A stretch of DNA of 64,000 nucleotides, taken from Ranitomeya imitator (Eukaryota). Where the stretch lies: NCBI RefSeq assembly GCF_032444005.1, contig NC_091284.1, positions 172,112,001-172,176,000 of the forward strand. The letters are read 5' to 3'. The stretch's first letter is position 1; the number at the start of each line of letters is the position of its first letter. Positions 28,621 through 62,134 of this stretch are shown here, piece by piece. The position numbers were made by a program, and so were the translations under genes. The notes beneath the pieces are model-generated. The model saw only the letters and a list, made by a program, of their open reading frames with translations. It ran no database searches and had not been told where the DNA came from.

Positions 28621-31600
28621 TGTTATGACCTGGTGGTTAGGAGCACCCGGAATCACCTGATAGTTAAACCTCATACAGGATGAGCTCTGGGATGTGGGAG
28701 CTCTGCTGACCGCAAGCCCTAATCCTATCACACACACTAAAAATAGCCGTGGAGCGCTCCTGACCAGACCTAGGCGCCTCGTCACAGCCTAAGAACTATC
28801 TAGAGATAGAAAATAAAGCCTACCTTGCCTCAGAGAAACTCCCCAAAGGTAAAGGAAGCCCCCCACATATATTGACTGTGAGTAAAGATGAAAGTCACAA
28901 ACGCAGAGATGAAACAGGTTTCAGCAAAGGGAGGCCAGACTTACTAAATAGACAGAGGATAGGAAAGGTAACTTTGCGATCAGCACAAAAACCTACAAAA
29001 GACCACGCAGAGTGTGCAAAAAAGACCTCCGCACCGACTCACAGTGCGGAGGGACCACTCTGCATCCCAGAGCTTCCAGCTAGCAAGACAAAATCATGAA
29101 AACCAGCTGGACAAGAAAACAGTGAACAAATAATGACTATCAGGAACTTAGCTTCTGCAGGAGAAGGCAGGTCACCAGAGAGATCCAGGAGCGAACTGAA
29201 CAAATGCAAAAACATTGACAGCTGGCATGGAGTAATGATCTGAGAGGAGTTAAATAGAGCAGCCAACCAAAGGACAACCCACGTCACCTGTGTAAGGAAC
29301 CTCAGAAGCAGCAGCTTCACTCATAGCCACCAGAGGGAGCCCATAGACAGAACTCGCCGAAGTACCACTCACGACCACAGGAGGGAGTTCGACAACAGAA
29401 TTCACAACAGTACCCCCCCCTTGAGGAGGGGTCACCGAACCCTCAGCAGAGCCCCCAGGCCGATCAGGATGAGCCAAATGAAAGGCATGAACAAGATCGG
29501 CAGCATGAACATCAGAGGCAAAAACCCATGAATTATCTTCCTGACCATAACCCTTCCACTTGACCAGGTACTGGAGTTTCCGTCTCGAAACACGAGAATC
29601 CAAAATCTTCTCCACCACATACTCCAACTCCCCCTCGACCAACACCGGGGCAGGAGGATCAACGGAGGGAACCATAGGTGCCACGTATCTCCGCAACAAC
29701 GACCTATGGAACACATTATGGATGGCAAAAGAAGCTGGAAGATCCAAACGAAATGACACAGGATTAAGAACTTCAGAAATCTTATATGGTCCAATGAAAC
29801 GAGGCTTAAACTTAGGAGAGGAAACATTCATAGGAACGTGACGAGATGACAACCAAACCAAATCCCCAACACGAAGTCGGGGACCAACACTACGCCGGCG
29901 GTTAGCGAAACGTTGAGCCTTCTCCTGGGACAATGTCAAATTGTCCACCACATGAGTCCAAATCTGCTGCAACCTGTCCACCACCGCATCCACACCAGGA
30001 CAGTCCGAAGACTCAACCTGCCCTGAAGAGAAACGAGGATGGAAACCAGAATTCAGAAAAACGGAGAAACTAATGTAGCCGAGCTGGCCCGATTATTAAG
30101 GGCGAACTCAGCCAAAGGCAAGAAAGACACCCAATCATCCTGATCAGCAGAAACAAAGCATCTCAGATATGTCTCCAAAGTCTGATTAGTTCGTTCGGTT
30201 TGGCCATTAGTCTGAGGATGGAAAGCCAAAGAAAAAGACAAATCAATGCCCATCTTAGCGCAAAAGGACCGCCAAAACCTCGAAACAAACTGGGAACCTC
30301 TGTCCGAGACGATGTTCTCTGGAATGCCATGCAAACGAACCACATGCTGGAAAAACAATGGCACCAAATCAGAGGAGGAAGGCAGTTTAGATAAGGGTAC
30401 CAAATGGACCATCTTAGAGAAGTGATCACAAACCCCCCAAATGACCGACATCTTTTGAGAAACAGGGAGATCAGAATTAAAATCCATGGAAATATGCGTC
30501 CAGGGCCTCTTCGGAATCGGCAAGGGCAAAAGCAACCCACTGGCACGAGAACAGCAGGGCTTAGCCCGTGCACAAATCCCACAGGACTGCACAAAAGAAC
30601 GCACATCCCGTGACAAAGAAGGCCACCAAAAGGATCTAGCCACCAAATCTCTGGTACCAAAGATTCCAGGATGACCAGCCAATACTGAACAATGAATCTC
30701 CGAGATAACTCTAATAGTCCATCTATCAGGGACAAACAGTTTCTCCGTAGGACAACGGTCAGGTCTATCAGCCTGAAACTTTTGCAGCACACGCCGCAAA
30801 TCAGGGGAAATGGCAGACAAAATTACCCCTTCTTTAAGAATACCCGCCGGCTCCGGAACACCCGGAGAGTCAGGCACAAAACTCCTTGACAGGGCGTCAG
30901 CCTTCACATTCTTAGATCCCGGAAGGTATGAAACCACAAAATCAAAACGGGAGAAAAAGAGCGACCATCGAGCCTGTCTAGAATTCAACCGTTTTTGGCA
31001 GACTCGAGATAAGTTAAATTCTTGTGGTCCGTCAAGACCACCACGCGATGTTTAGCTCCTTCAAGCCAATGTCGCCACTCCTCGAGTGCCCACTTCATGG
31101 CCAACAACTCCCGATTGCCCACATCATAATTGCGCTCAGCAGGCGAGAATTTTCTAGAAAAGAAGGCACAGGGTTTCATCACCGAGCCATGAGAACTTCT
31201 TTGCGACAAAACAGCCCCTGCTCCAATTTCAGAAGCATCAACCTCCACCTGAAAAGGAAGCGAAACATCTGGCTGGCACAACACAGGGGCAGAAGCAAAA
31301 CGACGCTTCAACTCCTGAAAAGCCTCTACAGCCGCAGAGGACCAATTGACCACATCAGCACCTTTTTTGGTCAAATCAGTCAACGGCTTAGCAACACTGG
31401 AAAAGTTAGTGATGAAGCGACGATAAAAATTAGCAAAGCCCAGGAACTTCTGCAAGCTCTTCACAGATGTCGGCTGAGTCCAATCGTAAATGGCCTGAAC
31501 TTTAACAGGGTCCATCTCGATAGTAGAAGGGGAAAAAATGAAACCCAAAAATGAAACCTTCTGAACACCAAAGAGACACTTTGACCCCTTCACAAACAAG

Positions 31601-34395
31601 GAATTCGCACGAAGGACCTGGAACACCATTCTGACCTGCTTCACATGAGATTCCCAATCATCCGAAAAGACCAAAATGTCATCCAAATATACAATCATGA
31701 ATCTATCCAGGTACACTCGGAAGATGTCATGCATAAAGGACTGAAACACAGATGGAGCATTAGAAAGCCCAAATGGCATAACCAGGTACTCAAAATGACC
31801 CTCGGGCGTATTAAATGCTGTTTTCCATTCATCACCCTGTTTAATTCGCACAAGATTATACGCACCACGAAGATCTATCTTGGTGAACCAACTAGCCCCC
31901 TTAATCCGAGCAAATAAATCAGACAGCAGCGGCAAAGGATACTGAAATTTGACTGTGATCTTATTAAGAAGGCGGTAATCAATACAAGGTCTCAAAGAAC
32001 CATCCTTCTTGGCCACAAAAAAGAACCCTGCTCCCAATGGTGACGACGACGGGCGAATATGACCCTTCTCTAAGGATTCCTTTACATAACTCCGCATAGC
32101 AGCGTGCTCTGGCACAGATAAATTAAACAGACGGCCCTTAGGAAACTTACTACCAGGAATCAAATCAATAGCACAGTCGCAATCCCTATGAGGAGGTAGG
32201 GCACCAGATTTGGGCTCTTCAAATACATCCCGGTAATCTGATAAAAACTCAGGGACTTCAGAAGGAGTGGAAGGTGAAATTGAGAGCAATGGAACATCAC
32301 CATGTACCCCCTGACAACCCCAACTGGACACAGACATAGATTTCCAATCCAACACTGGATTATGGACCTGTAGCCATGGCAACCCCAAAACGACCACATC
32401 ATGCAGATTATGCAACACCAAAAAGCGAATATCCTCCTGATGTGCAGGAGCCATGCACATGGTCAATTGAGTCCAGTACTGAGGCTTATTCTTGGCCAAA
32501 GGCGTAGCATCAATTCCTCTCAATGGAATAGGATACTGCAAGGGCTCCAAGAAAAAACCACAGCGCCTGGCAAACTCCAAGTCCATCAAATTCAGGGCAG
32601 CGCCTGAATCCACAAATGCCATTACAGAATAGGACGACAGAGAGCAAATCAGAGTAACGGACAAAAGAAATTTAGACTGTACCATACCAATGGTGGCAGA
32701 CCTAGCGAACCGCTTAGTGCGCTTAGGACAATCGGAGATAGCATGAGTGGATTCACCACAGTAAAAACACAGCCCATTCCGACGTCTGTGTTCTTGCCGT
32801 TCAGCTCTGGTCAAAGTCCTATCACACTGCATAGGCTCAGGCCTATGCTCAGAGAATACCGCCAGATGGTGAACAGCTTTGCGCTCACGCATGCGCCGAT
32901 CGATCTGAATGGCCAAAGACATAGACTCATTCAGACCAGCAGGCGTGGGAAATCCCATCATGACATCCTTAAGGGCTTCAGAAAGACCCTTTCTGAAAAT
33001 TGCCGCCAGGGCACATTCATTCCACTGAGTAAGCACAGACCACTTTCTAAACTTTTGACAGTACACCTCCATTTCATCCTGACCCTGACACAAAGCCAGC
33101 AAGATTTTCTATGCCTGATCCACTGAATTAGGTTCATCATTAAGCAATCCAAGTGCCAGAAAAAATGCATCAACATCACGCAATGCAGGATCTCCTGGCG
33201 CAAGGGAAAATGCCCAGTCTTGAGGGTCACCACGCAACAAAGAAATAATGATTTTTACCTGTTGAACAGGGTCACCAGAGGAGCGGGGTTTCAAAGCTAG
33301 AAACAGTTTACAATTATTTTTGAAATTCAAGAACCTAGATCTATCCCCAGAAAATAAGTCAGGAATAGGAATTCTAGGCTCTAACATAGGATTCTGAACC
33401 ACAAAATCTTGAGTGTTTTGTACCCTTTCAGTGAGATGATCCACACAAGAGGACAGACCTTGAATGTCCATGTCTACACCTGTGTCCTGAACCACCCAAA
33501 GGTCTAGGGGAAAAGAAAGACAAAACACAGTGCAAAGAAAAAAAATGGTCTCAGAAGTTCTCTTATCCCTCTATTGAGATGCATTAATACTTTGGGCCAG
33601 CTGTACTGTTATGACCTGGTGGTTAGGAGCACCCGGAATGACCTGATAGTTAAACCTCATACAGGACGAGCTCTGGGATGTGGGAGCTCTGCTGACCGCA
33701 AGCCCTAATCCTATCACACACACTAAAAATAGCCGTGGAGTGCTCCTGACCAGACCTAGGCGCCTCGTCACAGCCTAAGAACTATCTAGAGATAGAAAAT
33801 AAAGCCTACCTTGCCTCAGAGAAACTCCCCAAAGGTAAAGGAAGCCCCCCACATATATTGACTGTGAGTAAAGATGAAGGTCACAAACGCAGAGATGAAA
33901 CAGGTTTCAGCAAAGGGAGGCCAGACTTACTAAATAGACAGAGGATAGGAAAGGTAACTTTGCGATCAGCACAAAAACCTACAAAAGACCACGCAGAGTG
34001 TGCAAAAAAGACCTCCGCACCGACTCACGGTGCGGAGGGACCACTCTGCATCCCAGAGCTTCCAGCTAGCAAGACAAAATCATGAAAACCAGCTGGACAA
34101 GAAAACAGTGAACAAATAATGACTATCAGGAACTTAGCTTCTGCAGGAGAATGCAGGTCACCAGAGAGATCCAGGAGCGAACTGAACAAATGCAAAGACA
34201 TTGACAGCTGGCATGGAGTAACGATCTGAGAGGAGTTAAATAGAGCAGCCAACCAAAGGACAACCCACGTCACCTGTGTAAGGAACCTCAGAAGCAGCAG
34301 CTTCACGCATAGCCACCAGAGGGAGCCCATAGACAGAACTCGCCGAAGTACCACTCACGACCACAGGAGGGAGTTCGACAACAGAATTCACAACA
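28621..34395 (-). mobile_element. Full-length Ty3/Gypsy chromovirus (Tf1/sushi-like)
   Basis: ~789-bp LTRs at 28621-29409 and 33607-34395, with TG...CA ends and ~9 mismatches by eye. G-run PPT at ~29413-29420. AGAATG duplicated at both flanks. Confidence 0.96.
29250..33528 (-). pseudogene. pol: Gypsy gag-pol: Gag, CCHC, protease, RT, RNase H, integrase and chromodomain; one in-frame stop (~33110) and two frameshifts (~30988, ~30050)
   Basis: CFYCGESTHAISDC, FVDSGA, YLDDILV, VDASEIGAGAVL, HCSVLAGHPG..CGIC, SDRGSQF, YVVEKILDSR..YLVKWKGY. Confidence 0.93.
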
Positions 34396-37300
34396 AGAAT
34401 GTAGATATGGGGCATGATTAGAGACACGGAGCAGAATGAAAGACATGGGGCAGGATTGGATCATGGGGCAGGATGGATACGATGGAGACAGATGGGGCAG
34501 GATAGGGAGATCATATGGGGTAGAATGGATACTCATGAGTGCAGGATGCAAGAACATATGGCTGGAGCCAGGAATGAGATAAACGGGGCCAGGGTTGGGA
34601 ATATTATTACCATAGGGCCTAATTAAGGGATATTACTACTGCAGTGATATATTTATTTTATTTTTTGAGTATACTGCTTTAAATACGGGGGGGGGGGGGG
34701 GGCGGTCCTGTTACTGTGTAGAGTGACACTATATCACCTTTTTTTCTTCATGTGGTGTAATGTAGCAGTTGTGAAAAATTAAGTAATGTGTTCTGCAAGC
34801 GGAGCTCGAGATAACTGTGTTATTTCCTGCAGAAACGAGTCCTGGCTGGAAGAAATGATGGCTGTCTGTGCTAGATGAAAGATGAAGGACTTCACCTAGA
34901 GACGTCACTGGTGAGTCAGTGTTACCTATACACTGACACTATACACTGTATACTATACACAGAGCTCCTGGGTATAATGTCACCCGTGATCTCTGTATTA
35001 CCTCTACACAGTCACTGCATACTAAGTACAGATCTCCTGTGAATACTGGCACTTATGGTGATAGTATTGTGTTTTTTTTTTTTATTACTGATCAGTATTG
35101 TAGTATTCAGTCACAATGTGGTGGTAATATGTGGTCTGGAAATGGTGTTGTGGTATTTGTCCCTTGTATGTGCTATTTGGTCACCAAGAAGTGGTAATAT
35201 GTGGTCTTGACATGGTGCGGTGGTATTTGTTCCTTGTATGTGATATTATTTGATCACTGTGGTTTTAATTTGTGGTCTGGTCATGGTTCGGTGGTATTTG
35301 TTCCTTGTATGTGATATTATTCGATCACTGTGGTTGTAATTTGTGGTCTGGTCATGGTTCGGTGGTATTTGTTCCTTGTATGTAATATTGGTCAAAATAT
35401 ACCTAAATTGTATTGCATATTTTAACAAATATTTCATAGGTTACAGTAGAGTAGGGCCCGGCCATTTTTCTGGAATAATCTGGTTCAGGTATCACATGGC
35501 CCCCGTCACATGACCCCCGTCACATGACCCCCGTCACATGACCCCGTCACATGATCGGGGGGGCCCACAGTGTCTGAACAGCGGGGGCCCTGGCTATCCT
35601 TAATCCACCCCTGAGTGGAGATATCCCAGTTACTTGATGGATAAGGGGCCTGGCCATTAGTCTGTACTCTGGCTCCTTTGGTCTAGGGCCGCTTATTAGA
35701 GGGTCGGTCTCAAGCCTTCTCATTGTTGTCATCCATTACTTAAACCCCAGCTTGAGGATCATGCTATCTTCAGTCCCGTCTCCTCCTTCTCAGACCACAA
35801 GTCACCCAATGCATATGGCCTTGTCAGCCTACGGATTAAATGTACAGACCTGTCCTAATCACACACTAGGTCTACTATTGCTTCATTCCCAACTTCAACT
35901 ACCCTGAGGAACCGTTTCTGTACCTATGTATACTAACCCTATTGCGGGCTAATCCCAACAGTTAACTATCTCAGTCCCTGCAGTTTTTTGCTGGGCAGAA
36001 CTTCCTTCTAAAAATTAAACGTTTCTACAGTCAAACTACACATATCAAAAGCATTACATTATTGTTACGGCTGCGTCCGCAGATGCGGCCGAGCTGACGT
36101 CTCCACGTCGCCTGACCATGACGACGTGGGCGAGCATCCCAAAAAGGAATGCAATGTGGACCCACTGGACCACATAGAGTAACCTGAACCTACCCAGACT
36201 AGGGAAGGGCAGCAAGCAGGGTCTGTGGCAGCTGAGCATGTGAACAAGATGTCGATATGCAGAACTAGACTACACTGCACAACTTCAGGTATGAAGAAAC
36301 AAAGTTTACTTAAATGAAAGCACAGTACACAGCATATCATAATGATGTCAGAATCCCGATTCCACACGTCTAGGAAGGCTACACGTCTCAGATGTCAGAC
36401 GATGGCAGGAGTCATCATGGGTTGATGCAGTCCAGGATCATCTGGCACGGTCTTACTAGAACAGCCTCTCTCTCAGGCTTCAGGCGTAGCACAGGCTCAG
36501 CAGGAGAACATCAGACACCAATCCCAGAAGGACGTCATCACAGGGTGGACCTCAGGCCACCAGGACACAGGCAGGACACCAGGACATCGAACACTGGATA
36601 GACATCTGGGACACTGGCGTGGCAACCCAGGGCATCAGGACATCGGACACAGGAAGGACATCAGGACAAAAGCAGGACATCAGGTCATAGGCAGGACATC
36701 ACAACACAGGCAGGACATCGGACACTGGAAAGATATCTGGGACACTGGCGTGGCAGCCCAGGTCATGGGCTGGGACACTGGAATGGCAGCCCAGAGCATC
36801 AGAAACACAACACAAAGGACAAAGTTCAGACAGGATTAGGTACTGGATATGCAGCCTCCAGGACAGGCGGATCTGGGTACTCTGCCCCCAGAACAGGCGG
36901 AAAAAACAAGATACAAATGGATCTGGGTATTCTGCCCCCAGAGTAGGCGGGATCTGGGTACTCTGCTCCCAGAACAGGGGGAAAAAACAAGATACAAATG
37001 GATCTGGGTATTCTGCCCCCAGAGTAGGCGGGATCTGGGTACTCTGCCCCCAGAATAAGCGGTAGACAGGTATCAGCTCTGCCAGAACAGACTGCAGATA
37101 GAACGGCAGCTGCATACCTAACTCACTAGGCAAAACACAGAAACACAATGCAATGCTCTGGCCACGCCCAACAGGAAACATCGGATTACTTACCGGTAAT
37201 ACTCTTTTATAGAGCCACGACAGCACCCACTTGAGAGAGGGGATCCGCCCCTAAGAACAGGAAACCGTATGGAGAGAATAAAAGGGGCGGTCCCCCTCGC

Positions 37301-37754
37301 TCCCACAGTTGGGTTACAGAGAATGAAAGGAACCGCCCACCAGCATTAGAAGGCAATCCAATATCATTATTTATCTTTAGTTAACTTAAGTTTAGCTAAC
37401 TACAAGAACCATTCACCCTTATCAGTGCTCTTATGAAAGAATAATTATTAGGGAGGGAAGTGAAGGGGTGGTGTCGTGGCTCTATGAAAGAGTATTACCG
37501 GTAAGTAATCCGGTGTTTTCTCTTCGCCACGACAGCACCCACTTGAGAGACTTACAGAGATAGTCATTTGGGAGGGATCACCGTGTTAAGAACTGATCTA
37601 CCAAAAGATAAGTCAGATGAGGAAGACAAGTCCAATCTATAGTGAGTATAGAAGGTAGTAGGAGAAGACCAAGTTGCGGCCTTACATATCAGTTCTATTG
37701 GAACCTCCGCTCTCTCAGCCGATGATAAAGTCATCGCCCGAGTAGAGTGTGCCT

Positions 37755-38549
37755 TTACAGTCTCAGGTGGGTTCTCTCCTTTTGATGAATAGGCCAGACA
37801 AATTGCATCCTGAATCCACCGGGATAACGTATTCTTCGTGCACTAGAACCTTTCTTATGGCCCTGGAAGGAAATAAAGAGAGACCTGCTCTTCCTCCAGG
37901 GGCTAGTTCTGCCTAGGTAAGCTACTATAACCCTTCTTACATCTAGTGTATGGTATCTTTTCTCTTCCTGATTTGTGGGGTTACTATAGAAGGAAGAAAG
38001 GAAGATTTCCTGGGATCTGTGGAATTTGGTCCCTACTTTAGGTAAGTAAGAAGGGTCTGTTTTTAAGACAATTCTATCCTGGAATATTGACAGAAAGGGA
38101 GAATCTATTAATAATGCCTGAATGTCACCTACTCTTCTGGCTGACACTAAAGCAACAAGAAGAGCTGTCTTAAGAGAGACATATTTTATGTGGGCCGAGT
38201 GTAGTTGCTCGAATGGCTCCCCTGTTAGGACCTCTAGAACTAGATTAAGATCCCACGGTGGTATATGGGGGATCTGGATTGGTTCTGCCCTTTGGCATGC
38301 TGAAATAAATTGTGCTACCCATCTGTCTCCGGCAATATTGTGACCATATAGGGCTCCTAGAGCAGAAACCTGTACCTTCAGTGTACTGACTGATAAGCCT
38401 AAGTCACGCCCTCTCTGAAGAAATTCTAAAATAGCAGAAATGGGAATTTCTTTTGACATATCTGCTGAGTAGAAGGTAAGTCTTTTTTCCATACTCCTAC
38501 ATATATAGTTGTTGTAGATCTTTCTACTTAGTAGAATGGTATCAATCAA
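37755..38549 (-). pseudogene. DIRS tyrosine recombinase fragment
   Basis: LSVSTLKVQVSAL, PPWDLNLVL, VSARRVGDIQAL, YHTLDVRR; frameshifted before the C-terminal motifs. Confidence 0.85.
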
Positions 38550-38909
38550 CTTTTCTGAAAAGCCCCTTAGTTTTAATAGCTGCCTCTCAAATTCCAGGCT
38601 GTCAACCGTAGGCCCTTCACCTGAGGGTGGTTGAAGGGTCCCTAGGAGAGAAGGTCCTCAGCCTCTGGAAGGATCCATGGATCCAAGATCGACATGGCTC
38701 TGAGCCAGGAAAACCATGGTCGCTTGGGCCAAAAAGATGCTACTTAAATTATGTTCGCTTTGTCCTCCCTTATCTTCCTGATTACAGTCAGAAGGAGTAT
38801 TAATGGAGGAAATGCATATGCTTGCCGGAATGTCCACGGAACCTGGAGAGCATCGAGGATATTGGGGTTGTCGGACAGGAATAATGAAGCAAACTTTTTG
38901 ACTTGTCTG

Positions 38910-39553
38910 TAGTGTTGAGCATTCCGATACCGCAAGTATCGGGTATCGGCCGATATTTGCGGTATCGGAATTCCGATACCGAGTTCCGATATTTTTGTGA
39001 TATCGGGAATCGGTATCGGGATTTAGATTAATGTGTAAAATAAAGCATAAAAATAAAAAATATTGATATACTTACCCTCGGACGGGCCCTGGTTGTCACC
39101 GCTGCAATCGCCATGTTTTCCTTCCTATGAATGAGCTTGTTAAGTACCTTCGATGACGTCGCGGCTTGTGATTGGTCGCGTGAGCGGTCACATGACCGCT
39201 CAGCGACCAATCACAAGCCGCGACGTCATCGAAGGTCATTAAAGCGCTCATTCTTAGGAAGAAAAGCATGGCGATTGCAGCGGTGACAACCAGGGCCCGT
39301 CCGAGGGTAAGTATATCAATATTTTTTATTTTTATTCTTTATTTTACACATTAATATGGATCCCAGGGCCTGAAGGAGAGTTTCCTCTCCTTCAGACCCT
39401 GGGAACCATTATGGATACCTTCCGATATTTGTGTCCCATTGACTTGTATTGGTATCGGATATCGGTATCGGCGATATCCGATATTTTTCTGATATCGGCC
39501 GATACCATCCGATACCGATACTTTCAAATATCGGACGGTATCGCTCAACACTA
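38910..39553. mobile_element. Palindromic hAT-type MITE inserted in DIRS ORF2
   Basis: TIRs TAGTGTTGAGC / GCTCAACACTA. 8-bp TSD CTTGTCTG (38902-38909 and 39554-39561). The interior is largely an inverted repeat. Confidence 0.93.
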
Positions 39554-40734
39554 CTTGTCTGTTTCTTGTTGCAAAAAGGTCTATCTCGGGAGTACCCCAT
39601 TTCTTGGTTATCATTGTGAAGATACGACGAATGAGTACCCACTCTCCTTGATGGAGAGTGTGACGGCTGAGGAAATCTGCCTTTGAATTGTTCACTCCTC
39701 TGATATGCAGTGCTGACAAAGATAGAAGATGCATCTCGGCCATAGATAGGATGTCGTCTGTTATAGATATTAGAGCTCCTGATCTTGTTCCTCCTTGATG
39801 GTTTATGTATGCAACAGATGTCATGTTGTCTGATAGTATTCTTGTGCGAGTTCCGTGTAACTGCGGAAGGAATTTACATATGGCATGATAGACAGCTTTT
39901 TGTTCCCTTTCATTAGATGAATCGTTTGACTCAATATTATAGACCATTGCCCTTAAACTATCTGGTCTTCTAGATGTGCCCTCCAACCCATAGGACTGGC
40001 GTCAGTAAAAATTGTTTTTGAAGGTTTAATTACCCAAGGGACCCCACTGACAAGGTGATTCGGTTCTAACCACCAGGAGAGGGACTCAATTACTTTTAAT
40101 GGAAGGTATAGACGGCTACCTAAATGGCCTGGTAATTTCCCTTCTTCCTGTAATATTGTATACTGCAACCGTCTAGTGTGGAATTGAGCCCATGGAACCG
40201 CTGGAATGCATGATGTAAAGGAACCTAGAAGGGACATACCTTCTCTGAGGGAGATTACAGGGTTATTAATTACTGATTGTACTTTATTTTTTATTGTTAA
40301 CTGTTTGGATTCTGGAAGGAAACACCTCTGCCATTCAGAGTCTAAGATAAGACCCAAGAATGTTTGATGGGTTGTTGGAGACAATCTGGATTTTTCCCAG
40401 TTAATCAACCATCCCATTTCCTGTAGGGATAAGATCGTATTAGATAGGGGCTGTTCACATTGTGAAGGGGAGTTTCCCACCACCAGAAGGTCATCTAAGT
40501 ATGGAACTATGAGGGTATCTTTTAATCTTAAGAATGACATCACTTCTGACATTAATTAAGTAAAGACTCTGGGAGCTATCGACAGTCCGAAGGGCATTGC
40601 TGTATATTGAAAATGACGTATTCGCCCCTTCATCATGATTGCCACACGCAGATACTGCTGATGTTCTATATAAATTGGTAGATGGTAATACGCATCTTTT
40701 AGGTCGAGGACTGTCATAAAGCACCCAGGGAACA

Positions 40735-41210
40735 AATCACTGCACACGTCAGGGAAAGTCAATTTTGCTGAAGTGAAAGTTTTTATTCAAGGTGCAAAAG
40801 TTGAAGACGTAACAAGGCAACAATTCTAATTCTAACGTTTCGGCCACACAGTGGCCTTGATCACAGAGTGGTGCCTTAGTAGTAGTCCGTATCGTATGTG
40901 TGGCCGAAACGTTAGAATTAGAATTGTTGCCAACGTTTCGGCCACACAGTGGCCTTGATCACAGAGTGGTGCCTTAGTAGTAGTCCAAATCGTATCGTAT
41001 GTGTGGCCGAAACGTTAGAATTAGAATTGTTGCCTTGTTACGTCTTCAACTTTTGCACCTTGAATAAAAACTTTCACTTCAGCAAAATTGACTTTCCCTG
41101 ACGTGTGCAGTGTTTTGTTTTCTTCAAGTATTGGGGGTCATCTGACTCCGTTCACTTGCACCGCCTACATCCCATCTACAGTCGAGTGCTAGCTCTTTGT
41201 TTACTCTACT
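40735..41210 (+). mobile_element. Short Penelope-type pLTR foldback insertion in the DIRS RT
   Basis: 19-bp TSD ATAAAGCACCCAGGGAACA (40716-40734 and 41211-41229). Perfect 113-bp inverted repeat (40738-40850 / 41000-41112). Hammerhead-like GGCC..GGCCGAAACG units and an AATAAA. Confidence 0.7.
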
Positions 41211-44200
41211 ATAAAGCACCCAGGGAACAGAAGTTTTACAGTAGATCTGATCAACTCCATCTTGAAGGTTTGGTTCTCTAAAAAGATATTCAATTTTTTT
41301 TAAGATTTACTATAGTTCTATATGATCCGTCAGGTTTTGGAATAAAAAATAAAGGGGAGTAAAAACCTTTTCCCCTCTGATGAACCGGGACTTCCACTAA
41401 TACATTTTTGGATAGGAGATTTATTATTTCCTACTCCAAAAAAAGTTGTTGAAATTGAGACTTTAAAGAATTCAACAGGAATGAGTCCGGAGGGACGCGG
41501 GCAAAACTTAATTTTAGGACTGAAATTATGAGGCTAGTTGCTGAAGAGTTGGAGGTTACCACACGCCATTGTGTGGAGAAAAAAGACAATCTACCACCTC
41601 ACTGGTAGATCAGTCCTAACGTTGTTTGTCTTCAATTTTAAATGGGTGTTTTCTGAAAAAAAGAACCTTTCTGTATGGTAACCTTATTGGCCCAGTGGTC
41701 TTGGTTTCTAAAATCCCTTCTCTTATTAAAAACGGGCTTCCAGAATGCTCCCTATAAGATGGAAAAAAGTTATTAGGGAACCCCTTTTTCCTTTCACCCG
41801 CTTTGGTTAGGATTTCATCTAGTTTTGTACCAAACAGGTACTCACCCTGGCATGGAAGGCCACATAATTTTGATTTTGTTTGGGCGTCTCCCTTCCAACC
41901 CTTTAGCCAAAGGGCCCGACGAGCCGTATTGGTTAGGCCTGCTGATTTGGCTGCTAACCGGATAGTCAGCAGATGAGTCCGCCAAAAACGCCGTAGCGTC
42001 TCTGATTAGGGGTAAAGAAGAGATCAGCTTATCTCTGGAGAGGCCACCTTTTAGACCTTCTACTAGGTCATTAAGCCAGACTAACATGGACCTTGCCGTA
42101 CATGTAGCTGATATAGCTGGTTTGAATGCCCCTGTACATGATTCCCATGCCCGATTTAACAGAGAGTCGGCTTTGCGATCCAGTGGGTCTTGTAAGGAAC
42201 CAGAATCGTCTACTGAAAGTAAGAATTTCTTGGACGTGGATGCAACCGCCGTGTCTACCATCGGGGCTTTGGCCCAGGTAGATATGTCCTTGTCCTTAAA
42301 GGGATAATATCTGTTTGATGAAGGCAGCCCTCTTTGCCCCTGGCTCTCCCATTCTTTTTTAACTAAATTTTTGATTGCTGTTATTACGGATAAGGTCTTT
42401 TCCTTTCTGACAATCCTGCGAAAATTATATCCTGTGGTGTTTTGGGGTCTTTAGTGTCCTTAATAACCATGGTGTCACATACAGATTTAACAAGATTATC
42501 AATGCTCTCTGTTGGAAAGCTTGTATCTTGTTCACCTTCCGAGGAAATATATTCCTGGGAAACATCCGTATCTTCATTATCAGTAGAATAGTCTGGTTTT
42601 GGTGAATTATACTTCCTGCTTTTACTTTCAGGAATACTTTCTGAACTACGTAAGGCCCGTAATTCGTCCCTGATCATCTGTCTGATGTCATCTGGTCTTA
42701 CTGAGGATTCCTCACGTAAGGTGTTTTCAATACAAATATAACACATTCTTTTTGTATGATTATCCGGGAGGGGCTGGGTACATAAGGCACACTGTTTCTT
42801 TGATTTTTCGGATCTTTTTGCCTAGGGTGCATAGAGAAAAGAGGGGGCAACAATCAGCTTAATAGGGTGGGATACACACTCACCCCAGTGAAGCAGTCGA
42901 ACAAGGTACTGGCTGGAGAGGAGGAGATGAAGGCACAGGCTGAGAGGAGGATCGGTTGGATCTTTTCTTTTTAGTGCTTTTTGTGGAGGATCTGCTCTGC
43001 TTGGATCGTCCACGGCTTGTGCTGCTGCGAGGTACATTAGCTTTGTCTTCTAACGAAGGCACCGCTGAGTCCTGAGGTGAAGCCATGCTTGGACGCCGGG
43101 AGATCTGCGCTGGCGTCCTTTACCCTGGAGGCCGCCATCTTCTTCCTGTTGTACCTGGAAGTCTTCATCACTTCCGGGTAGCGGCCATCTTGCGTGTGTC
43201 TGCGCACTGCCTGGCATCATCTCTCCCCTCCACTCACCCCTGAAGCTTTTGCTTTACTTCTGGGGGAGCAAATACCAGGCTCCACACTCGCACGTACCGC
43301 CGAGCGTGGTGTCGTGCTTACCCAGGTGCTTTTCTGCCCGCCGCAGGCCCGCCGAAGAGTCTCCTTCCTCCGTGAGCCAGGCGACTCCCCGATCCTGGCC
43401 TCACTGTGCCTGTCAGCAGAGGGGGGAAGCTGACATCAGGACCCCTGACGCTGCTTCCAGCACTGGAGCCCCTGCCGTCCTCTAAGGTAAACCGCGCAGG
43501 CGGCGTCCAGGCCAGGTATCCTCTTCTCCACGGGTTCCCTTAGGAACAGGAAACCAACTGTGGGAGCGAGGGGGACTGCCCCTTTTATTCTCTCCATAGG
43601 GTTTCCTGTTCCTAGGGGCGGATCCCCTCTCTCAAGTGGGTGCTGTCATGGCAAAGAGAAAAGAGGGAGTTGATATAGGAGCTGCCCCTCAGCAATAGGA
43701 AGCAACACTGGTGCACACTCAAACCCTAATAAAAGCAGGGTAGGTGTGACCGCGCGTACCCGAAGCACAAACAGAAACTGTGGCTTAGGGCACCTGGCAG
43801 TGACTGCTAGCCTGGACACACGTGGAAAGTCATGCACCAGCTGCACGGGACCTCGCAAGCCGTGGCTACCTTCCACAGCGGCAGCCAGGGACCGCACATG
43901 CGAGTGGCTATGCAGCAGAGCAAAAACATCACAGGACATGTACAGCTACGCAGCGGTGGCAGGGAACTGAGCAGCGTCTATACAGGTAACAGACAACAGT
44001 ATCCCTGCACATTAGGGGGAGAGGAGCAAGGGTTAAAGCAGAGACATGCAGAGTAATGCCGAAGAAACAAGGTATAAACCCCACGGCGTTAGTTATCCCC
44101 TCCTCATGCCCCCTCTGCTGAAGACCCAAAAACAGTTTCAGAGAAAATTCTTTTAGGTTAGGCAGTAAGGCCCACAGTTCACAATATGGCAGCAGAGTTC

Positions 44201-45540
44201 ATAGCTCAAACAATCCAGACCGCTGACCAAGCGCTGGATTGAGCAATATAGTCCACTATCTGGTGGGATCCGAGCAGTCTAATCCACTGACGAAATGGGG
44301 CTCGGGAAAGTTCTGCAGTCCACACATGCTCAGCGGAGTCCATGGCCAGAGCATTCTGTTACAGCAGCGACCGCAGACGTGGCTGAGCTGACGCCTCCAC
44401 GTCGCCTGACCATGACTACGTGGGCGAGCGTCCCAAGAAGGAATGCAATGTGGACCCACTGGACCACATAGAGTATGTGTATGAAAGCACAGTACATAAC
44501 ATAATGATGTCAGGATCCCGATTCCACATGTCTAGGAAGAGTACACGTCTCAGACGTCAGACGATGGCAGGAGTCATCACGGGTTGATGCAGTCCAGTCA
44601 TCTGGCACGGGCTTACTAGGACAGCCTCTCTCTCAGGCGTAGCACAGGCTCAGTAGGAGAACATCAGACACTGATCCCGGAAGGACGTCGTCATAGGGTG
44701 AACCTCAGGACATCAGGACACAGACAGGACATCAGGACACAGGCAGGACATCAGGACACAGGCAGGACACCTTGGACAGACGTCAGACGATGGCAGCAGT
44801 CATCATGGGTTGATGCAGTCCAGGGTCATCTGGCACAGGCTTACTAGAACGGCCTCTCTTTCAGGCCTCAGGCATAGCACAGGCTCAGCAGGAGAATATC
44901 AGACACCTATCCCAGAAGGATGTCATCACATGGTGGACCTCAGGCCATCAGGACACAGGCAGGACATCAGGACACAGGCAGAACATCGAACACTGGATAG
45001 ACATCTGGGATGCTGGCGTGGCAGCCCAGGTCATCAGCTGGGACACTGGCGTGACAACCCAGGACATCAGGACATCGGACACAGGAAGGACATCAGGACA
45101 AAAGCAGGACATCAGGTCATAGGCAGGACATCAGGACACAAGCAGGACATCAGGACACAGGCAGGACATCGGACACTGGAAAGATATCTGGGACACTGGC
45201 GTGGCAGCCCAGGTCATGGGCTGGGACACTGGCGTGGCAGCCCAGAGCATCAGGAGCATAACACAAAGGACACAGTTCAGACAGATTTTTTGGCCGTGCA
45301 TAAAGAGCAAAAAGCAGAAATTAAATTTTATATTTATTAAGATTATGCTTATGTGTTCTTAAGTGAAAATGTTGCATTTAATATAAACATAGCCAAGGTC
45401 AGGCCGGGGTACCATAAGGCCACCCTATGGCATGGCTTGCGGTGCAACAGTCAGAGGAAATAACCAAATATTTACAAACTTTTCAGTATTATTTTGAAAC
45501 GGCTACATAAAATGTTGTTTTTTAAATTTACATCCATATA

Positions 45541-47946
45541 CAGTGGGTACAGAAAGTATTCATACCCCTTTACATTTTTCACACTTTGTTTCATTGCTGT
45601 CAATTGGTAAATTTTAAAAAGTTCATTTTTTTCCCATTAATGTACACTCCGCACCCCATTTTGATTGAAAAAACCCATAAATGTAGAAAAGTTTGCAAAT
45701 GTATTAAAAAAGAAAAACTGAAATATCACATGGTGATAAGTATTCAGACCCTTTGCTCAGTGTTGAGCAGAAGCACCCTTTTGAGCTAGTACAGCCATGA
45801 ATCTTCTTGGGAATGACTCAACAAGTTTTTCACACCTGGATTTGGGGATCTTCTGCCATTCTTCCTTACAGATCCTTAGTGGAGCACACTTGGACTGGGT
45901 CGCGGTTAGTAGTGGGGTACCACAGGGGTCCGTATTGGGCCCTCTTCTTTTCAACACATTTATTAATGACCTTGTAGGGGGTATACAGAGCAGAATTTCA
46001 ATATTTGCAGATGACACTAAACTCTGCAGGGTAATCAATACAGAGGAGGACAACTTTATATTACAGGATGATTTATGTAAACTAGAAGCTGGGGCTGATA
46101 AATGGCAAATGAGCTTTAATGGGGATAAATGTAAGGTCATGCACTTGGGTAGAAGTAATAAGATGTATAACTATGTGCTTAATTGTAAAACACTGGGCAA
46201 AACCGTCAATGAAAAAGACCTGGGAGTATGGGTGGATGACAAACTCACATTTAGTGGCCAGTGTCAGGCAGCTGCTAAAAAGGCAAATAAAATAATGGGA
46301 TGCATTAAAAGAGGCATAGATACTCATGAGGAGATCATAATTTTACCTCTATACAAGTCACTAGTTCGACCACACTTAAAATACTGTGTACAGTTCTGGT
46401 CTCCGGTGTATAAGAAAGACATAGCTGAACTAGAACGGGTGCAGAGAAGAGCGACCAAGGTTATTAGAGGACTGGGGGGTCTGCAATACCAAGATTGATT
46501 ATTACACTTGGGGCTTTTTAGTTTGGAAAAACGAAGGCTAAGGGGTGATCTTATTTTAATGTATAAATATATGAGGGGACAGTACAAAGACCTTTCCGAT
46601 GATCTTTTTAATCATAGACCTTAGACAGTGACAAGGGGGCATCCTCTACGTCTGGAGGAAAGAAGGTTTAAGCATAATAACAGACGCGGATTCTTTACTG
46701 TAAGAGCAGTGAGACTATGGAACTCTCTGCCATATGATGTTGTAATGAGTGATTCATTACTAAAATTTAAGAGGGGACTGGATGCCTTTCTTGAAAAGTA
46801 TTATGTTACAGGCTATATATGTTAGATTCCTTGATAGTGCGTTGATCCAGGGAACTAGTCTGATTGCCGTATGTGGAGTTGGGAAGAAATTTTTTTTCCC
46901 CAATGTGGAGCTTACTCTTTGCCACATGGTTTTTTTTGCCTTCCTCTGGATCAACATATTAGGGCATGTTAGGTTAGGCTATGGGTTGAACTAGATGGAC
47001 TAAAAGTCTTCCTTAAACCTTTATAACTATGTTACTATGTTTTCTCCACACATACCCCTTAGAGTTATTACCAAAAATGTCTATCTTCATCTCAACAGAT
47101 CAGATAATCTTATTTCTCAGTCTGGGAGTCCTTCATGTGTTTTTTTTTTAGCAAACTCTATGTGGGCTTTCATATGTCTTTCACTGAAGAGAGGCTTCTG
47201 TCGGGCCACTTTGCCATAAAGGCCCGACTGGTGGAGGGATGCAGTGATAGTTGACTTTGTGGAACTTTCTCCCTTCTCCCTATTGCATCTCTGGAGATCA
47301 GCCACAGTGATCTTGGGGTTCTTCTTTACGTCTCTCACCAAGGCTCTTCTCCCACGATTGCTCAGTTTGGCTGGATGGCGAGGTGTAGGAAGACTTCTGG
47401 TGGTCCCAAACTTCTTCCATGTAAGGATTATGGGGGCCAATGTGCTCTTAGGAACCTTGAGTACTGCAGAAATTCTGTTGTATCCATGGCCAGATCTGTG
47501 CTTTGCCACAATTCTGTCACTGGGCTCCTTGGCCAGTTCCTTTGACCCCATGATTCTCATTTGGTCTGACATGCACAGTGAGGTGTGAGGTCTTATATAG
47601 ACAGGTGTGTGCCTTTCCAAGTCAATTCCTATCAGTTTAATTAAACACAGCTGGACTCCAATGATGGAGTATAACCATCTCAAGGAGGATCACGAGGAAA
47701 TGGACAGCATGAGACTTAAATTTGAGTGTCTGAGCAAAGAGTCTGAATACTTATGACCATATGATATTTCAGTTTTCTTTTTTAATAAATATGCAAAAAT
47801 GTCTACGTTTCTGTTTATTTTCAGTCAAGATGGGGTGCAGAGTGTACATTAATGAGAAAAAAATGAACTTTTTTGAATTTACCAAATTGCTGCAATGAAA
47901 CAGAGTGAAAAATTTATAGGGGTCTGAATACTTTCCATACCCACTG
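45541..47946 (-). mobile_element. Tc1/mariner element with long TIRs; transposase defective
   Basis: TA|CAGTGGGTA...TACCCACTG|TA. The minus-strand N-terminus reads MGSKEL..RIVAKHRSG..KVPKST..KFGTTRSL; the C-terminus reads ICKEEWQKIPKSRCEKLVES. Confidence 0.93.
45878..47040 (+). mobile_element. 5'-truncated, degraded CR1 (different subfamily) inside the Tc1
   Basis: SGVPQGSVLGP, FADDTKL, LVRPHLKYCVQFW; (TTACTATG)-type tail ending at ~47040. Confidence 0.92.
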
Positions 47947-47959
47947 TATATATACATGT

Positions 47960-48610
47960 AAAAAGTAATTCTGGTGTTTTGACTTTTTTTTATCACTACG
48001 CCGTTTAGTGATCAGGTTAATCCTTTTTTTATTGATAGATTGGTTAATTCTGAACACGGCCATACCAAATATGTGTGGGCTTGATTCTTTTTTATCGTTT
48101 TAGTTTGAATGGGGCAAAAGGGGGGTGATTTAAACTTTTATTTTTTTTAAAACATTTTTTTTACTTTTGCCATGCTTCAATAGTCTCCATAGGAGACTAG
48201 AAGCTGGCATAACTTGATCGGCTCAGCTACATAGAGGCGATGTTCAGATCGTCTCTATGTAGCTGAATTACTGAGCTGCTATCAGCGCAGACCACTGGGT
48301 GGTGCTCATAGCAATCCCACACTGACAGCCATAGAGGTCTCAAAGAGACCTCTGGTTGTCATACTGATGCACCGATGTCACCCGATCATGTGACTGGGGT
48401 CACGGATGTGCATATTTCTGGCCCGATGGCCGTAAGCATGATTTAAATGCCGCTTTCAGAGTTTGACATCAACATTTAGCTAGTTAATAGGCGCAGGTGG
48501 ATCAAAACAGCTGACATGTCCCGGCTTAGATGTAGGCTCACCACCGGAGCCCACATCAAAGCGGGGAATACTGGCAGCGGCATATTAGTACGTCTGATGT
48601 CAGTAAGGGG
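47960..48610 (+). mobile_element. Right end of a TTAA-type (piggyBac-like) non-autonomous element
   Basis: Ends GTCAGTAAGGGG|TTAA. 47975-48150 resembles 14350-14520. Confidence 0.6.
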
Positions 48611-48659
48611 TTAAATAAATGGTCTTTACAGACAGTCTGGATTCAGCAAGATTGGAGAG

Positions 48660-51213
48660 AGGAGTCGGCTCAAGTGGCTTTGTGTCTGCATCGTCCGGAT
48701 CTGAATAAACAGTTCTTGCTTGAGGTGGACGCATCCTCATTAGGGGCTGGAGCTGTGCTTATGCAGAAGTCCTCCTTGGGTCTCTGCGTGTCCTGCGGCT
48801 TCTTATCCAAGGCCTTCTCCACTTCTGAACGGAAATATTACATTGGGGACTGGGAATTGCTCGCCGTTAAGATGGCTCTGGGGAAGTGGCATTACCTGCT
48901 GGGCGCAGATATTATCCAGTAGTGATCTACACGGACAATAAGAATCTGGCATATCTCCAGTCCGCTCAGAGACTAAATCCTCGCCAAGCCAGGAGGTCTT
49001 TGTTTTTTGTCTGCTTTAACTTTCTTTTGCATTTTAGATCCGGTGACAAGAATATCAGAGCTGATGCCCTTTCTCTCTCATTTCTGTCTGGGGACCAAGA
49101 GGAGGATCCTCAATTTATCACTGAACCCTCTAAGATGGTTACGGTCACCCCTATCTGCCTGTCGCAAGTTCCTCCACCATTGTGGGTGAATCTGAGAAGG
49201 AGCGAGTTTTGTCTTGGGGTCACTCCTCCAAGGTGGCTGGTCACGCGGGACAAAGGAGGACATTACAATTGATCTCTTGTCATTACTGGTGGCCATCCAT
49301 TAGGAAGGAGATCTATGTCTATGTGGATGCCTGTCCGACGTGTGCCCGCAATAAAATTCCTAGACAATTTTCTACCGGTCCTCTCCTGCCACTGCCTGTA
49401 TCATCCGTTCCTTGGCAGCACATTATGGATTTGCCAGTTTCTGAGGGTTGCACCGTGATCTGGGAGGTCATGGATCGCTTCTCTAAAATGACGCATTTTA
49501 CCCCATTGTCTGCTCTTCCGTCCTTTCCTGAATTGGCCGTCAGCTTCATTAAGCATATTTTCTGCCTGCCTGGATTTCCTCGCCCAATCGAGTTTACTTC
49601 CAGATTCTGGCGAGCACTCTATAAACATTTGGATTTTGTCTTGGACTTCTCCTCGGCTTATCACCCTCAGTCCAATGGACAAGTGAAGTGTGTCAACCAG
49701 GTCCTGGGCAACTACCTGCGACACTTCATCAATGCCCACCATAATGATTGGGTGAAATTACTTCCCTGGGCTGAGTTCTTGTATAACAATCTATGGCAAG
49801 TTGTCATTCTGCATTGTGTTCGGTCGGCAACCCAAGATTCCTCTTCCAGTGATGGTTCCTTCTGATGTTCCTGTAGCAGATGTCCTTTCCAAGGATTTTG
49901 TGAAGATGTGGGAGGACACCAGAGTCACGTTAGAAGTGTCCTCGGTTCTATGAAGAGACATGAAGACAAGAGGTGTCTGGACCTTCTGTGCTTCCATTGT
50001 GGAGACAAGGTATTGCTTTCATCCAGGTACGTCTGGCTGAAGATCCCTTCTTACAAGTTGGGTCCTCATTTTATCGGGCCTTTCGAGGTGTTGAAGCGGA
50101 TTAATGAGGTCTCCTATAACTTGAAGCTGCCTCCTTCTCTGCGGATTCCAAATTCCTTTCATGTATCCCTACTGAAGCCAGTCATCCTAAGTCCCTTCTT
50201 CAAGGATCCCAGTACCACACCCATGCCAACAGCCTCGGATGATGTTTTTGAAGTGGAGAACATCTTGGCCATGAAGAAGGTGAGAGGCAAGACCTTCTTC
50301 CTTGTTGACTGGAAGGGATTTGGTCCTGGAGAGATGTCCTGGCAGCCCAAGAAGAATATCCACGCTCCGATTCTTCTCCGGAACTTCATCGATGGCCTGA
50401 AGAGGAGGGGGCGTAAAGGGTGGGTATTGTTAGCATCACGCTGGCTTCCTGGCATGTCAGTTCATTCACCTGTGCTGCAGTTGGTCCCCCTCCCTCTCAT
50501 GCTTCGCATGCTCCCAGCAGCATTTCCAGCCGGGCCTCTGGACATGTTCTAAGGGTGCACAAGTGCACGCTCTCACCCTCTTAAAGGTCCAGCGCATGCA
50601 CTTGCTATTTCCTCCCCAGCCAATGGTTTTGAGGCATTATCAATATATTGCTTCCTCTCCACTGAGGAGGTGCCTGAGCAACCTTCCTGTTACAGTCTGT
50701 TGTGTAAAATTGCATACCAGTGCAAATCCTGCTTACTGTACTCTTAACTACAAATCCTGCCTGCAGTACTCTAAGTACCAATCCTGCCTGCTGTACTCCA
50801 AGAGCAAATCCTGCTTGCTGCACTCCATAGCAAATCCTGCTTGCTGCACTCAGAAGTCAATCCTGCATTCTGCACTAAGAAGCAAATCTTGCTTGTTGCA
50901 CTCAGAAGCCAATCCTGCATGCTGCACTCAGAAGCAAATCCTCCTTGCTGCACTCAGTAGCAAATGCTAGCTGCATTCAGACGCAAACTCTGTCTCTGAT
51001 ACAAGCTCTGCCTGCTGCTCCACCCAGTCTGTCTTTCGGGTCCAGCTGCTGCGCAACCGTTGGTCTGCCCTTGAGTGGTACCTGGCATTCATCGGGAGCC
51101 AAGACTAACCTCACCATCAGAGGCTCTAGTGAATAGTCAGGTGATCGCTTAGTCGCCCCTCCAGGCTCTCCACGGTCCGTGGTACAGTGGTTCCACAAAC
51201 CTCATTCGTGACA
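48660..51213 (+). mobile_element. Degenerate, 5'-truncated Gypsy chromovirus (RNase H, integrase, chromodomain) with its 3' LTR at ~50428-51213
   Basis: [61 protein letters not shown] purine tract precedes TGTTAG, and the LTR ends GTGACA. Confidence 0.88.
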
Positions 51214-62103: not shown

Positions 62104-62117
62104 TCCTTCTGCTCTGG

Positions 62118-62134
62118 TCCCACTGCTGCCACCA
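62118..62134 (-). promoter_or_regulatory. Primer-binding site complementary to the tRNA-Leu 3' end
   Basis: TGGTGGCAGCAGTGGGA, 3 nt after the 5' LTR. It matches the complement of vertebrate tRNA-Leu ...UCCCACCGCUGCCACCA with one mismatch (recalled sequence, not searched). Confidence 0.8.

What the first reader, a model, noticed from the sequence alone, without database searches (positions are those of the whole stretch)
36063..45290. Non-coding twin-LTR element with a self-priming PBS; a DIRS landed between its TATA box and predicted start site
Seen: two diverged ~1.4-kb LTR-like copies flank only ~360 bp of non-coding DNA. On the minus strand the 5' LTR ends at 44357 and is followed, after 1 nt, by AATGCTCTGGCC (44355-44344). 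This is not a TGG-starting tRNA PBS. It is the exact 12-nt complement of GGCCAGAGCATT inside the LTR (37163-37152). With the DIRS removed, that 12-mer starts 30 nt after the first T of a TATA-like TATATCA (43677). Established: S. pombe Tf1 primes reverse transcription by folding its first ~11 nt onto the PBS, and the same has been proposed for vertebrate Tf1/sushi-group elements. Inference: this is a TRIM/LARD-like parasite that keeps the self-priming circuit but no ORFs and borrows chromovirus machinery. The DIRS insertion separates TATA from TSS in this LTR copy.
Basis: partly seen in the sequence, partly recalled or inferred. Interest (0 to 1): 0.75.

Follow-up and report, generated by a model that had tools for sequence, protein, structure and literature searches.

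The report
Gene-less self-priming frog LTR retrotransposon
This is an old, damaged copy of a very abundant frog jumping-gene family that has no genes of its own and seems to start its copying with its own RNA end rather than a tRNA, a known trick of Tf1/sushi-type elements, so it is a tidy but fairly ordinary find.

Summary
The core observation holds. On the minus strand an LTR ends (…GTAACA) at 44357. One nucleotide later a 13-mer (44355-44343) is the exact complement of a 13-mer inside the other LTR copy (37164-37152). That site lies 27-31 nt after the only TATA-like motif in the LTR once a 6.5-kb DIRS-like insertion (37170-43652) is set aside.

A complement this long appeared in 4 of 5000 shuffles. 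The neighbouring autonomous chromovirus (28621-34395) shows the same geometry with a different sequence. Other notes of this scan report self-priming Gypsy elements elsewhere in this poison-frog genome.

Corrections:
- The 5' LTR is truncated to 928 bp and lacks the TATA and start site.
- The two copies share only about 0.8-0.9 kb.
- The 1.45-kb LTR and 358-bp interior rest on one inferred boundary.

The interior has no coding signal. Contigs of four coded organisms show a high-copy family and tile the interior.

Verdict: a degraded member of a non-autonomous LTR family with Tf1/sushi-type self-priming signals. It is a new member of known kinds and of moderate-to-low interest.

The parts
44357..45284 (-). 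5' LTR, truncated. Only the R/U5-side 928 bp remain; U3, the TATA and the predicted start are missing.
   Evidence: It aligns to 36063-36833. In another run, contigs continue past 45284 with the sequence that follows 36833 in copy A (loose end at 45284). A contig identical over 45226-45496 confirms the truncation junction (record 8).
44343..44355 (-). PBS-like 13-mer AATGCTCTGGCCA, 1 nt after the LTR end
   Evidence: It is not a TGG-first tRNA-type site. Position 44353 varies (A>T on the + strand) among family copies in other organisms.
43999..44356 (-). Interior, 358 nt, with no detectable coding capacity. It holds a 45-aa ORF at 44343-44206 and a purine-rich tract at 44109-44084.
   Evidence: Contigs of four organisms tile it (table 8).
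43653..43998 (-). 3' LTR, U3 part, starting TGTTGTC after GCAGGGATAC
   Evidence: The junction resembles the chromovirus junction GGGGGGGTAC|TGTTGTG. The boundary is uncertain: the depth step lies near 44110.
43671..43677 (-). TATA-like TATATCA, the only such motif in the LTR
   Evidence: Its flank AACTCC(C)TC is shared with the chromovirus TATTTAACTCCTCTC.
37170..43652 (-). DIRS-like retroelement inserted into the 3' LTR (ends uncertain by about 10 nt). It is degraded and itself carries a foldback insertion at about 40731-41119.
   Evidence: Inverted terminal repeats and internal complementary region. RT hit. tblastn homology to the DIRS-like ORFs at 17005-20481.
37152..37164 (-). 13-mer TGGCCAGAGCATT, the predicted 5' end of the transcript (start of R)
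   Evidence: Exact complement of 44343-44355. It pairs with the PBS in the minimum-free-energy fold of both model leaders.
36063..37169 (-). 3' LTR, R-U5 part (1.1 kb), with 19-, 33- and 81-nt tandem repeats, ending GTAACA at 36063
28621..34395 (-). Comparator, not part of the element: a young autonomous chromovirus with the same self-priming layout
   Evidence: LTRs of 789 bp, 98.9% identical. PR-RT-RH-IN-SH3_Tf2-1-Chromo domains. PBS and complement read.

Best explanation
The region is one old, broken copy of a high-copy frog LTR retrotransposon family that carries no genes. Read on the minus strand, it consists of:
- a 5' LTR that has lost its U3 side;
- a primer-binding site;
- a roughly 358-nt non-coding interior;
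- a 1.45-kb 3' LTR, later split by a DIRS-like insertion.

Its cis-signals are those of Tf1/sushi-type chromoviruses. Transcription would start about 30 nt after the LTR's only TATA-like motif. The first 12-13 nt of the RNA would fold back over about 1.1 kb of R-U5 onto the complementary site just after the LTR. After cleavage by the partner's RNase H, that stretch would prime minus-strand DNA synthesis. Gag, protease, RT/RNase H and integrase would come in trans from an autonomous chromovirus that recognises similar LTR ends.

Shown: the anatomy, the complementarity and its improbability, the parallel in the neighbouring chromovirus, the lack of coding signal, and the multi-copy and multi-species status.

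Inferred: the transcription start, the priming itself, trans-mobilisation, and that the short interior is the form that spread.
For: - A 13-nt exact complement lies 1 nt after the LTR end. A match this long appeared in 4 of 5000 shuffles.
- The complement sits 27-31 nt after the only TATA-like motif in 1453 nt.
- The neighbouring autonomous chromovirus has a 9-nt PBS 2 nt after its LTR. That PBS is complementary to a site 30 nt after TATTTAA. R-U5 makes up 77% of its LTR, against 76% here.
- Three motifs are shared with that chromovirus: GGGATAC|TGTTGT at the PPT/LTR start, TAACA at the LTR end, and AACTCC after the TATA.
- The minimum-free-energy fold pairs the 5' 13-mer with the PBS, with pair probability 0.38 and about 1.0 in the two model leaders.
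- No Pfam, tblastn or credible phmmer relatives were found for the interior ORFs.
- Thousands of contigs from four organisms lie on the LTR and tile the interior. Some bridge LTR end, PBS and interior: records 6, 16, 21, 29 and 32.
- Self-priming is established for Tf1 and has been implicated from fungi to vertebrates (PMC4600332, PMC6317226).
Against: - There are no transcription-start data, and no RNA run holds the stretch.
- The 5' LTR lacks the start region, so the complement is seen between two different LTR copies.
- The target-site duplication cannot be checked.
- The two LTR copies differ by about 4-8% in clean blocks and by large indels.
- LTR depth is 10-90 times that of 44110-44322. 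The step lies near 44110, not at 43998. One 1113-nt contig diverges after 44063. The family is therefore heterogeneous, and the LTR boundary or the standard interior may differ from this copy.
- The PPT next to the LTR is weak.
- The interior has no similarity to the neighbouring chromovirus leader, so no partner is identified.
- The PBS variant at 44353 could not be paired with its LTR partner at 37154.
Confidence: 0.6

Rival explanations
1. This copy, or a small subfamily, is an internal-deletion derivative of an autonomous self-priming chromovirus that owns these LTRs. It is not a distinct gene-less family that spread in this form.
For: The LTR and the last ~110 nt before it are 10-90 times deeper than 44110-44322. 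A 1113-nt contig (record 25) and a 566-nt contig (record 21) leave the window's sequence inside or beside the interior.
Against: The low-depth part of the interior is itself multi-copy in four organisms; for example, 15 distinct contigs cover 44170 in X1. No gag or pol remnant is present at all. No autonomous element with these LTRs is in the window.
Confidence: 0.2
2. The two repeats are not the LTRs of one insertion. They could be separate insertions, a recombinant or a local duplication, and the PBS complement would be incidental.
For: The copies differ by about 4-8% plus a 132-bp and a 235-bp indel. The 5' end and the target-site duplication are missing. Another 12-nt complement in the leader proved to be no better than a same-strand control.
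Against: An anchored complement this long appeared in 4 of 5000 shuffles, and it lies beside the only TATA-like motif. Contigs from other organisms carry the same LTR-end/PBS/interior junction and the same interior/LTR-start junction. The junction motifs match the chromovirus layout.
Confidence: 0.07
3. This is an LTR element primed by a host RNA (a tRNA, a tRNA half or another RNA) rather than by its own 5' end. The LTR-internal complement would then have another role or none.
For: The transcription start is not mapped. The TATA-like motif is non-canonical. The frog tRNA set could not be consulted, and there are no tRNA genes in the window.
Against: There is no TGG at the usual 0-5 nt after the LTR. 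The TGG-first reading 10 nt in leaves too few bases for a tRNA acceptor/T-arm pattern (my reading). The same layout recurs in the neighbouring chromovirus with a different sequence.
Confidence: 0.1

Closest known systems
Tf1 (S. pombe), Tj1 and vertebrate Tf1/sushi-group chromoviruses (self-priming LTR retrotransposons)
   Same: The PBS directly after the 5' LTR is complementary to the predicted first nucleotides of the element's own transcript, and there is no tRNA-type PBS. The LTR ends and PPT junction are like those of a Tf2-1/chromodomain element 2 kb away (PMC4600332, PMC6317226).
   Different: There is no gag or pol at all, so membership by protein phylogeny cannot be claimed. R-U5 is 1.1 kb, so the fold-back spans far more RNA than in Tf1. 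Priming and cleavage have not been tested.
TRIM (terminal-repeat retrotransposons in miniature)
   Same: It is a non-autonomous LTR element with a short non-coding interior bounded by a PBS and a PPT-like end.
   Different: As defined in PMC6934838, TRIMs are under 1 kb, have 100-250-bp repeats and carry a tRNA-complementary PBS. This element is about 3.3 kb when intact, has 1.45-kb LTRs and has a self-complementary PBS.
LARD (large retrotransposon derivatives)
   Same: Long LTRs and no coding capacity, with presumed trans-mobilisation by a Gypsy partner (from my own knowledge of the class).
   Different: LARDs have a long (kb-scale) conserved non-coding interior and a tRNA-type PBS. Here the interior is about 0.36 kb.
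DIRS1-like retroelements (for the inserted element only)
   Same: Inverted terminal repeats, an internal complementary region that matches the joined ends, an RT and a gag-like ORF, and no obvious target-site duplication.
   Different: No tyrosine recombinase domain was detected by Pfam. The copy is degraded and carries a foldback insertion.

Membership tests
LTR retrotransposon (structural definition) | Two direct long terminal repeats with TG...CA ends | tested here: met
   The repeats are 36063-36833 and 44357-45284. Both end GTAACA on the minus strand, and the 3' LTR starts TGTTGT at 43998. The 5' LTR is truncated.
LTR retrotransposon (structural definition) | Target-site duplication flanking the element | tested here: inconclusive
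   The 5' end of the element is missing beyond 45284. Only the 3' flank can be read.
LTR retrotransposon (structural definition) | PBS after the 5' LTR and a polypurine tract before the 3' LTR | tested here: inconclusive
   A PBS-like site is present. The tract next to 43998 is only GCAGGGA. A better purine run lies 85-110 nt upstream, at 44109-44084.
Tf1/sushi-type self-priming elements | PBS complementary to the 5' end of the element's own mRNA | tested here: inconclusive
   A 13-nt exact complement sits at the position predicted from the TATA spacing. The true 5' end is unmapped, and no RNA run holds the stretch.
Tf1/sushi-type self-priming elements | RNase H cleavage of the folded 5' end to release the primer | not testable with these tools
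   This needs biochemistry or cDNA-intermediate mapping.
Tf1/sushi-type self-priming elements | Pol with a chromodomain integrase that groups with Tf1/sushi | tested here: not met
   The element has no coding sequence. Only the neighbouring element has these domains.
TRIM | Total length under 1 kb with 100-250-bp terminal repeats and a tRNA-complementary PBS (PMC6934838) | tested here: not met
   The LTR is about 1.45 kb and the PBS is not of the tRNA type.
LARD | Large non-coding interior of several kb between long LTRs | tested here: not met
   The interior is about 358 nt.
Non-autonomous LTR retrotransposon family (general) | Many copies with the same gene-less interior between LTRs | tested here: inconclusive
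   The interior is multi-copy and is tiled by contigs in four organisms. No single contig spans LTR-interior-LTR, and depth is uneven.
DIRS (the insertion) | Inverted terminal repeats plus an internal complementary region and an RT | tested here: met
DIRS (the insertion) | Tyrosine recombinase instead of a DDE integrase | tested here: inconclusive
   Pfam gave no hit on the C-terminal ORFs. They are homologous only to the C-terminal part of the other DIRS-like ORF.

The most novel reading that the evidence does not exclude
This is a gene-less LTR family that spread to very high copy number in several dendrobatid frogs while keeping only the cis-parts of the self-priming circuit: promoter, the 13-nt start, the PBS, and LTR ends like those of local chromoviruses. 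That would make it a natural minimal substrate for self-primed reverse transcription in a vertebrate. The A>T PBS variant that dominates in two other organisms offers a ready-made covariation test.
Probability: 0.45. Interest if true: 0.45.

Novelty: new member of a known kind. Interest (0 to 1): 0.33.

Why it matters
Self-priming is proven only in fission-yeast elements and is inferred elsewhere from sequence. An abundant gene-less family that keeps just the self-priming signals would show which cis-elements suffice for trans-mobilisation by chromoviruses in a vertebrate. Its thousands of copies would also give a large natural data set for testing PBS/start covariation. For this locus alone the value is modest. 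It is a dead, nested copy in a transposon pile-up (foldback inside DIRS inside LTR element), and the scan has already noted self-priming Gypsy elements many times in this genome.

Tried and rejected
- **Shorter LTR in plus orientation.** I considered an LTR ending at 36833/45284, with an imperfect ATTAT/ATTTT duplication. I rejected it because contigs from another run continue past 45284 exactly as copy A does after 36833.
- **Second 12-nt complement.** The leader segment 44334-44323 pairs with 36231-36242. It is no better than a same-strand control, so I dropped it.
- **Other copies through spurious ORFs.** The search for homologous proteins on the R-U5 ORF found nothing.
- **Metagenome pattern scans.** Two scans found nothing.
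- **Earlier findings searched by sequence.** Blank.
- **The 45-aa ORF after the PBS.** A phmmer search gave six hits. All are unrelated repeat proteins scored by summed weak repeats, and none is a Gag relative.
- **Interior against the neighbouring chromovirus.** Its leader and 3' UTR show no similarity above shuffles.
- **tRNA genes in the window.** None found.
- **Poly(A) signals.** There is no canonical signal in either LTR.
- **In-silico joins.** I excised the DIRS and joined LTR pieces only inside scripts, to measure spacing and to fold.
Full report
**Layout (plus-strand coordinates)**

- Copy A runs 36063-37169 and resumes at 43653, after a 6.5-kb insertion at 37170-43652.
- Unique DNA then runs to 44356.
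- Copy B runs 44357-45284.

A and B align only over 36063-36833 against 44357-45284. The first 119 nt are 92% identical, and the later blocks are 92-96% identical. A has 132 extra bp (36182-36313). B has a 235-bp internal duplication. Both carry 19- and 33-nt tandem repeats, and A alone carries the 81-nt repeat (36865-37062), which lies beyond B's truncation point. No other copy lies in the window.

Copy B is truncated. In run X1, contigs continue past 45284 with the sequence that follows 36833 in copy A. A 271-nt contig identical to 45226-45496 confirms the truncation junction.

**The complement**

On the minus strand the LTR ends GTAACA at 44357. One G follows, and then AATGCTCTGGCCA at 44355-44343.

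In 5000 dinucleotide-preserving shuffles of the LTR, a complement anchored within 6 nt of the LTR end reached 13 nt or more 4 times, and 12 nt or more 8 times. TATATCA at 43677-43671 is the only TATA-like motif in the 1453-nt LTR. It lies 27-31 nt before the 12-mer, depending on how the DIRS ends are drawn. Position and spacing together make chance unlikely.

If the RNA starts at the 13-mer, ViennaRNA pairs it with the PBS in the minimum-free-energy structure of both model leaders. The pair probabilities are 0.38 and about 1.0. This partly follows from the complementarity itself.

**The insertion**

- The element at 37170-43652 has 102-nt inverted terminal repeats (95% complementary).
- It has an internal region (37466-37545) that is the complement of its joined right and left ends.
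- It has an RT fragment.
- It shows protein-level homology across the gag-like, RT and C-terminal parts to the other DIRS-like element at 17005-20481.
- No tyrosine recombinase domain was detected.

Both ends carry a related ~10-nt motif: AACAGGAAAC on the left and AAAGAGAAAAG on the right. The exact breakpoints are therefore uncertain by about 10 nt.

**Comparison with the neighbouring chromovirus**

The element at 28621-34395 (minus strand) has these features:
- 789-bp LTRs that are 98.9% identical;
- an ATTCT duplication;
- a G8 polypurine tract;
- PR, RT, RNase H, integrase, SH3_Tf2-1 and chromodomain.

Two nucleotides after its LTR lies ACAGCTGGC. This is the complement of GCCAGCTGT in the LTR, 30 nt after TATTTAA. 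R-U5 is 606 of 789 nt (77%), against 1101 of 1453 nt (76%) in the target.

The two elements share three motifs:
- GGG(A/G)TAC|TGTTGT at the PPT/LTR start;
- TAACA at the LTR end;
- AACTCC after the TATA.

The start motifs both begin GCCAG and then differ, and the PBS differs in step. It places the target's cis-signals in the Tf1/sushi-type lineage, where self-priming is demonstrated for Tf1 and implicated up to vertebrates (PMC4600332, PMC6317226). Other notes of this scan report the same signature in several Gypsy families of this genome, which they call a poison frog. The chromovirus Pol is 90-98% identical to Ranitomeya imitator proteins.

**Coding capacity**

The 358-nt interior (44356-43999) has stops in all frames. 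Pfam at E up to 10 found nothing. tblastn against the other retroelements in the window found nothing.

A 45-aa ORF starts at a good Kozak ATG that overlaps the end of the PBS. A phmmer search of 1.8 billion representatives gave six hits. All are unrelated repeat proteins scored through summed weak repeats. I take the interior as non-coding.

**Family evidence**

No run holds half of the stretch, and none is on record as RNA. Logan contigs of four coded organisms, laid at 80% likeness or more, place 2353-3839 contigs per run on 43400-45500.

- Records 6, 16, 21, 29 and 32 bridge the LTR end, the PBS and the interior.
- Records 15, 18 and 25 bridge the LTR start and the interior's 3' end.
- Records 4, 5, 19, 20, 22 and 23 tile the rest.
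- At 44170, between 6 and 15 distinct contigs per run carry T where this copy has G, so the interior is multi-copy.

Depth is uneven. The stretches 43684-44109 and 44394-45316 are 10-90 times deeper than 44110-44322 in three of the runs. The step lies near 44110, not at 43998. There are three possible reasons:
- the last ~110 nt before the LTR is shared with more abundant relatives;
- the LTR starts further up, after the purine run at 44109-44084;
- low-complexity matches inflate that bin.

I could not decide among these. A 1113-nt contig (record 25) leaves the window's sequence after 44063.

The PBS position 44353 is A>T in most contigs of X8 and X13 and in a minority of contigs of X1 and X3. 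Its pairing partner is 37154, which was outside the single read-laying run allowed. Covariation therefore remains untested.

**What could not be done**

No further copies could be fetched:
- the spurious-ORF search found nothing;
- two metagenome scans found nothing;

As a result, target-site duplications, the standard interior length, covariation, the transcription start and the autonomous partner remain open. The interior has no similarity to the neighbouring chromovirus leader.

**Verdict**

The sequence observation is real and non-random. The self-priming reading is the best explanation and fits the local chromovirus biology. The 'gene-less parasite' reading is plausible and has multi-species support, but it is not proven as the family's standard form.

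Self-priming in vertebrate Tf1/sushi elements is known, and so are non-autonomous LTR elements. I found no paper in the held library that describes the combination, but it is an expected one. I rate it a new member of known kinds, with moderate-to-low interest.

Noticed in passing
window 37170-37180, 43648-43663 and 37466-37545: Both ends of the DIRS-like insertion carry a related ~10-nt motif (AACAGGAAAC and AAAGAGAAAAG). This motif also forms the junction inside its internal complementary region. That would fit recombination between a circle junction and a look-alike target core.
   Followed up: partly
window 45285-50552: Right of the truncated LTR lie two plus-strand fragments. One is a 5'-truncated RT element at 45872-46813, 69% identical in protein to the RT ORF at 7647-9161. 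The other is a 5'-truncated second chromovirus: RNase H at 48563-48969, integrase at 49182-49865, and SH3_Tf2-1 plus chromodomain at 49908-50552. The missing U3 of copy B is not found anywhere up to 64000.
   Followed up: partly
window 26143-26438 and 34818-35113: A 296-nt direct repeat (93% identical) brackets the young chromovirus. This suggests that the chromovirus sits inside an older repeat-bounded element that includes the 493-aa ORF at 26696-28177, which has no Pfam hit.
   Followed up: no
window 60169-62322 (minus): A 717-aa ORF with a SCAN domain and a CCHC zinc knuckle lies between 99%-identical repeats at 59351 and 62138.
   Followed up: no
window 44206-44343 (minus): A 45-aa ORF starts at GCCATGG, overlapping the 3' end of the PBS. 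It has no credible relatives. Whether it is kept open in other copies is unknown.
   Followed up: partly
window 40731-41119: A 120-nt inverted repeat (99% complementary) with duplicated 64- and 44-nt units lies inside the DIRS RT region. This is the foldback noted earlier as Penelope-type with hammerhead-like units (s1-288230). I did not test it here.
   Followed up: no
window 35117-35389 and 35492-35554: A 71-nt tandem repeat (3.9 copies) and a 14-nt repeat lie just outside the element's 3' end.
   Followed up: no
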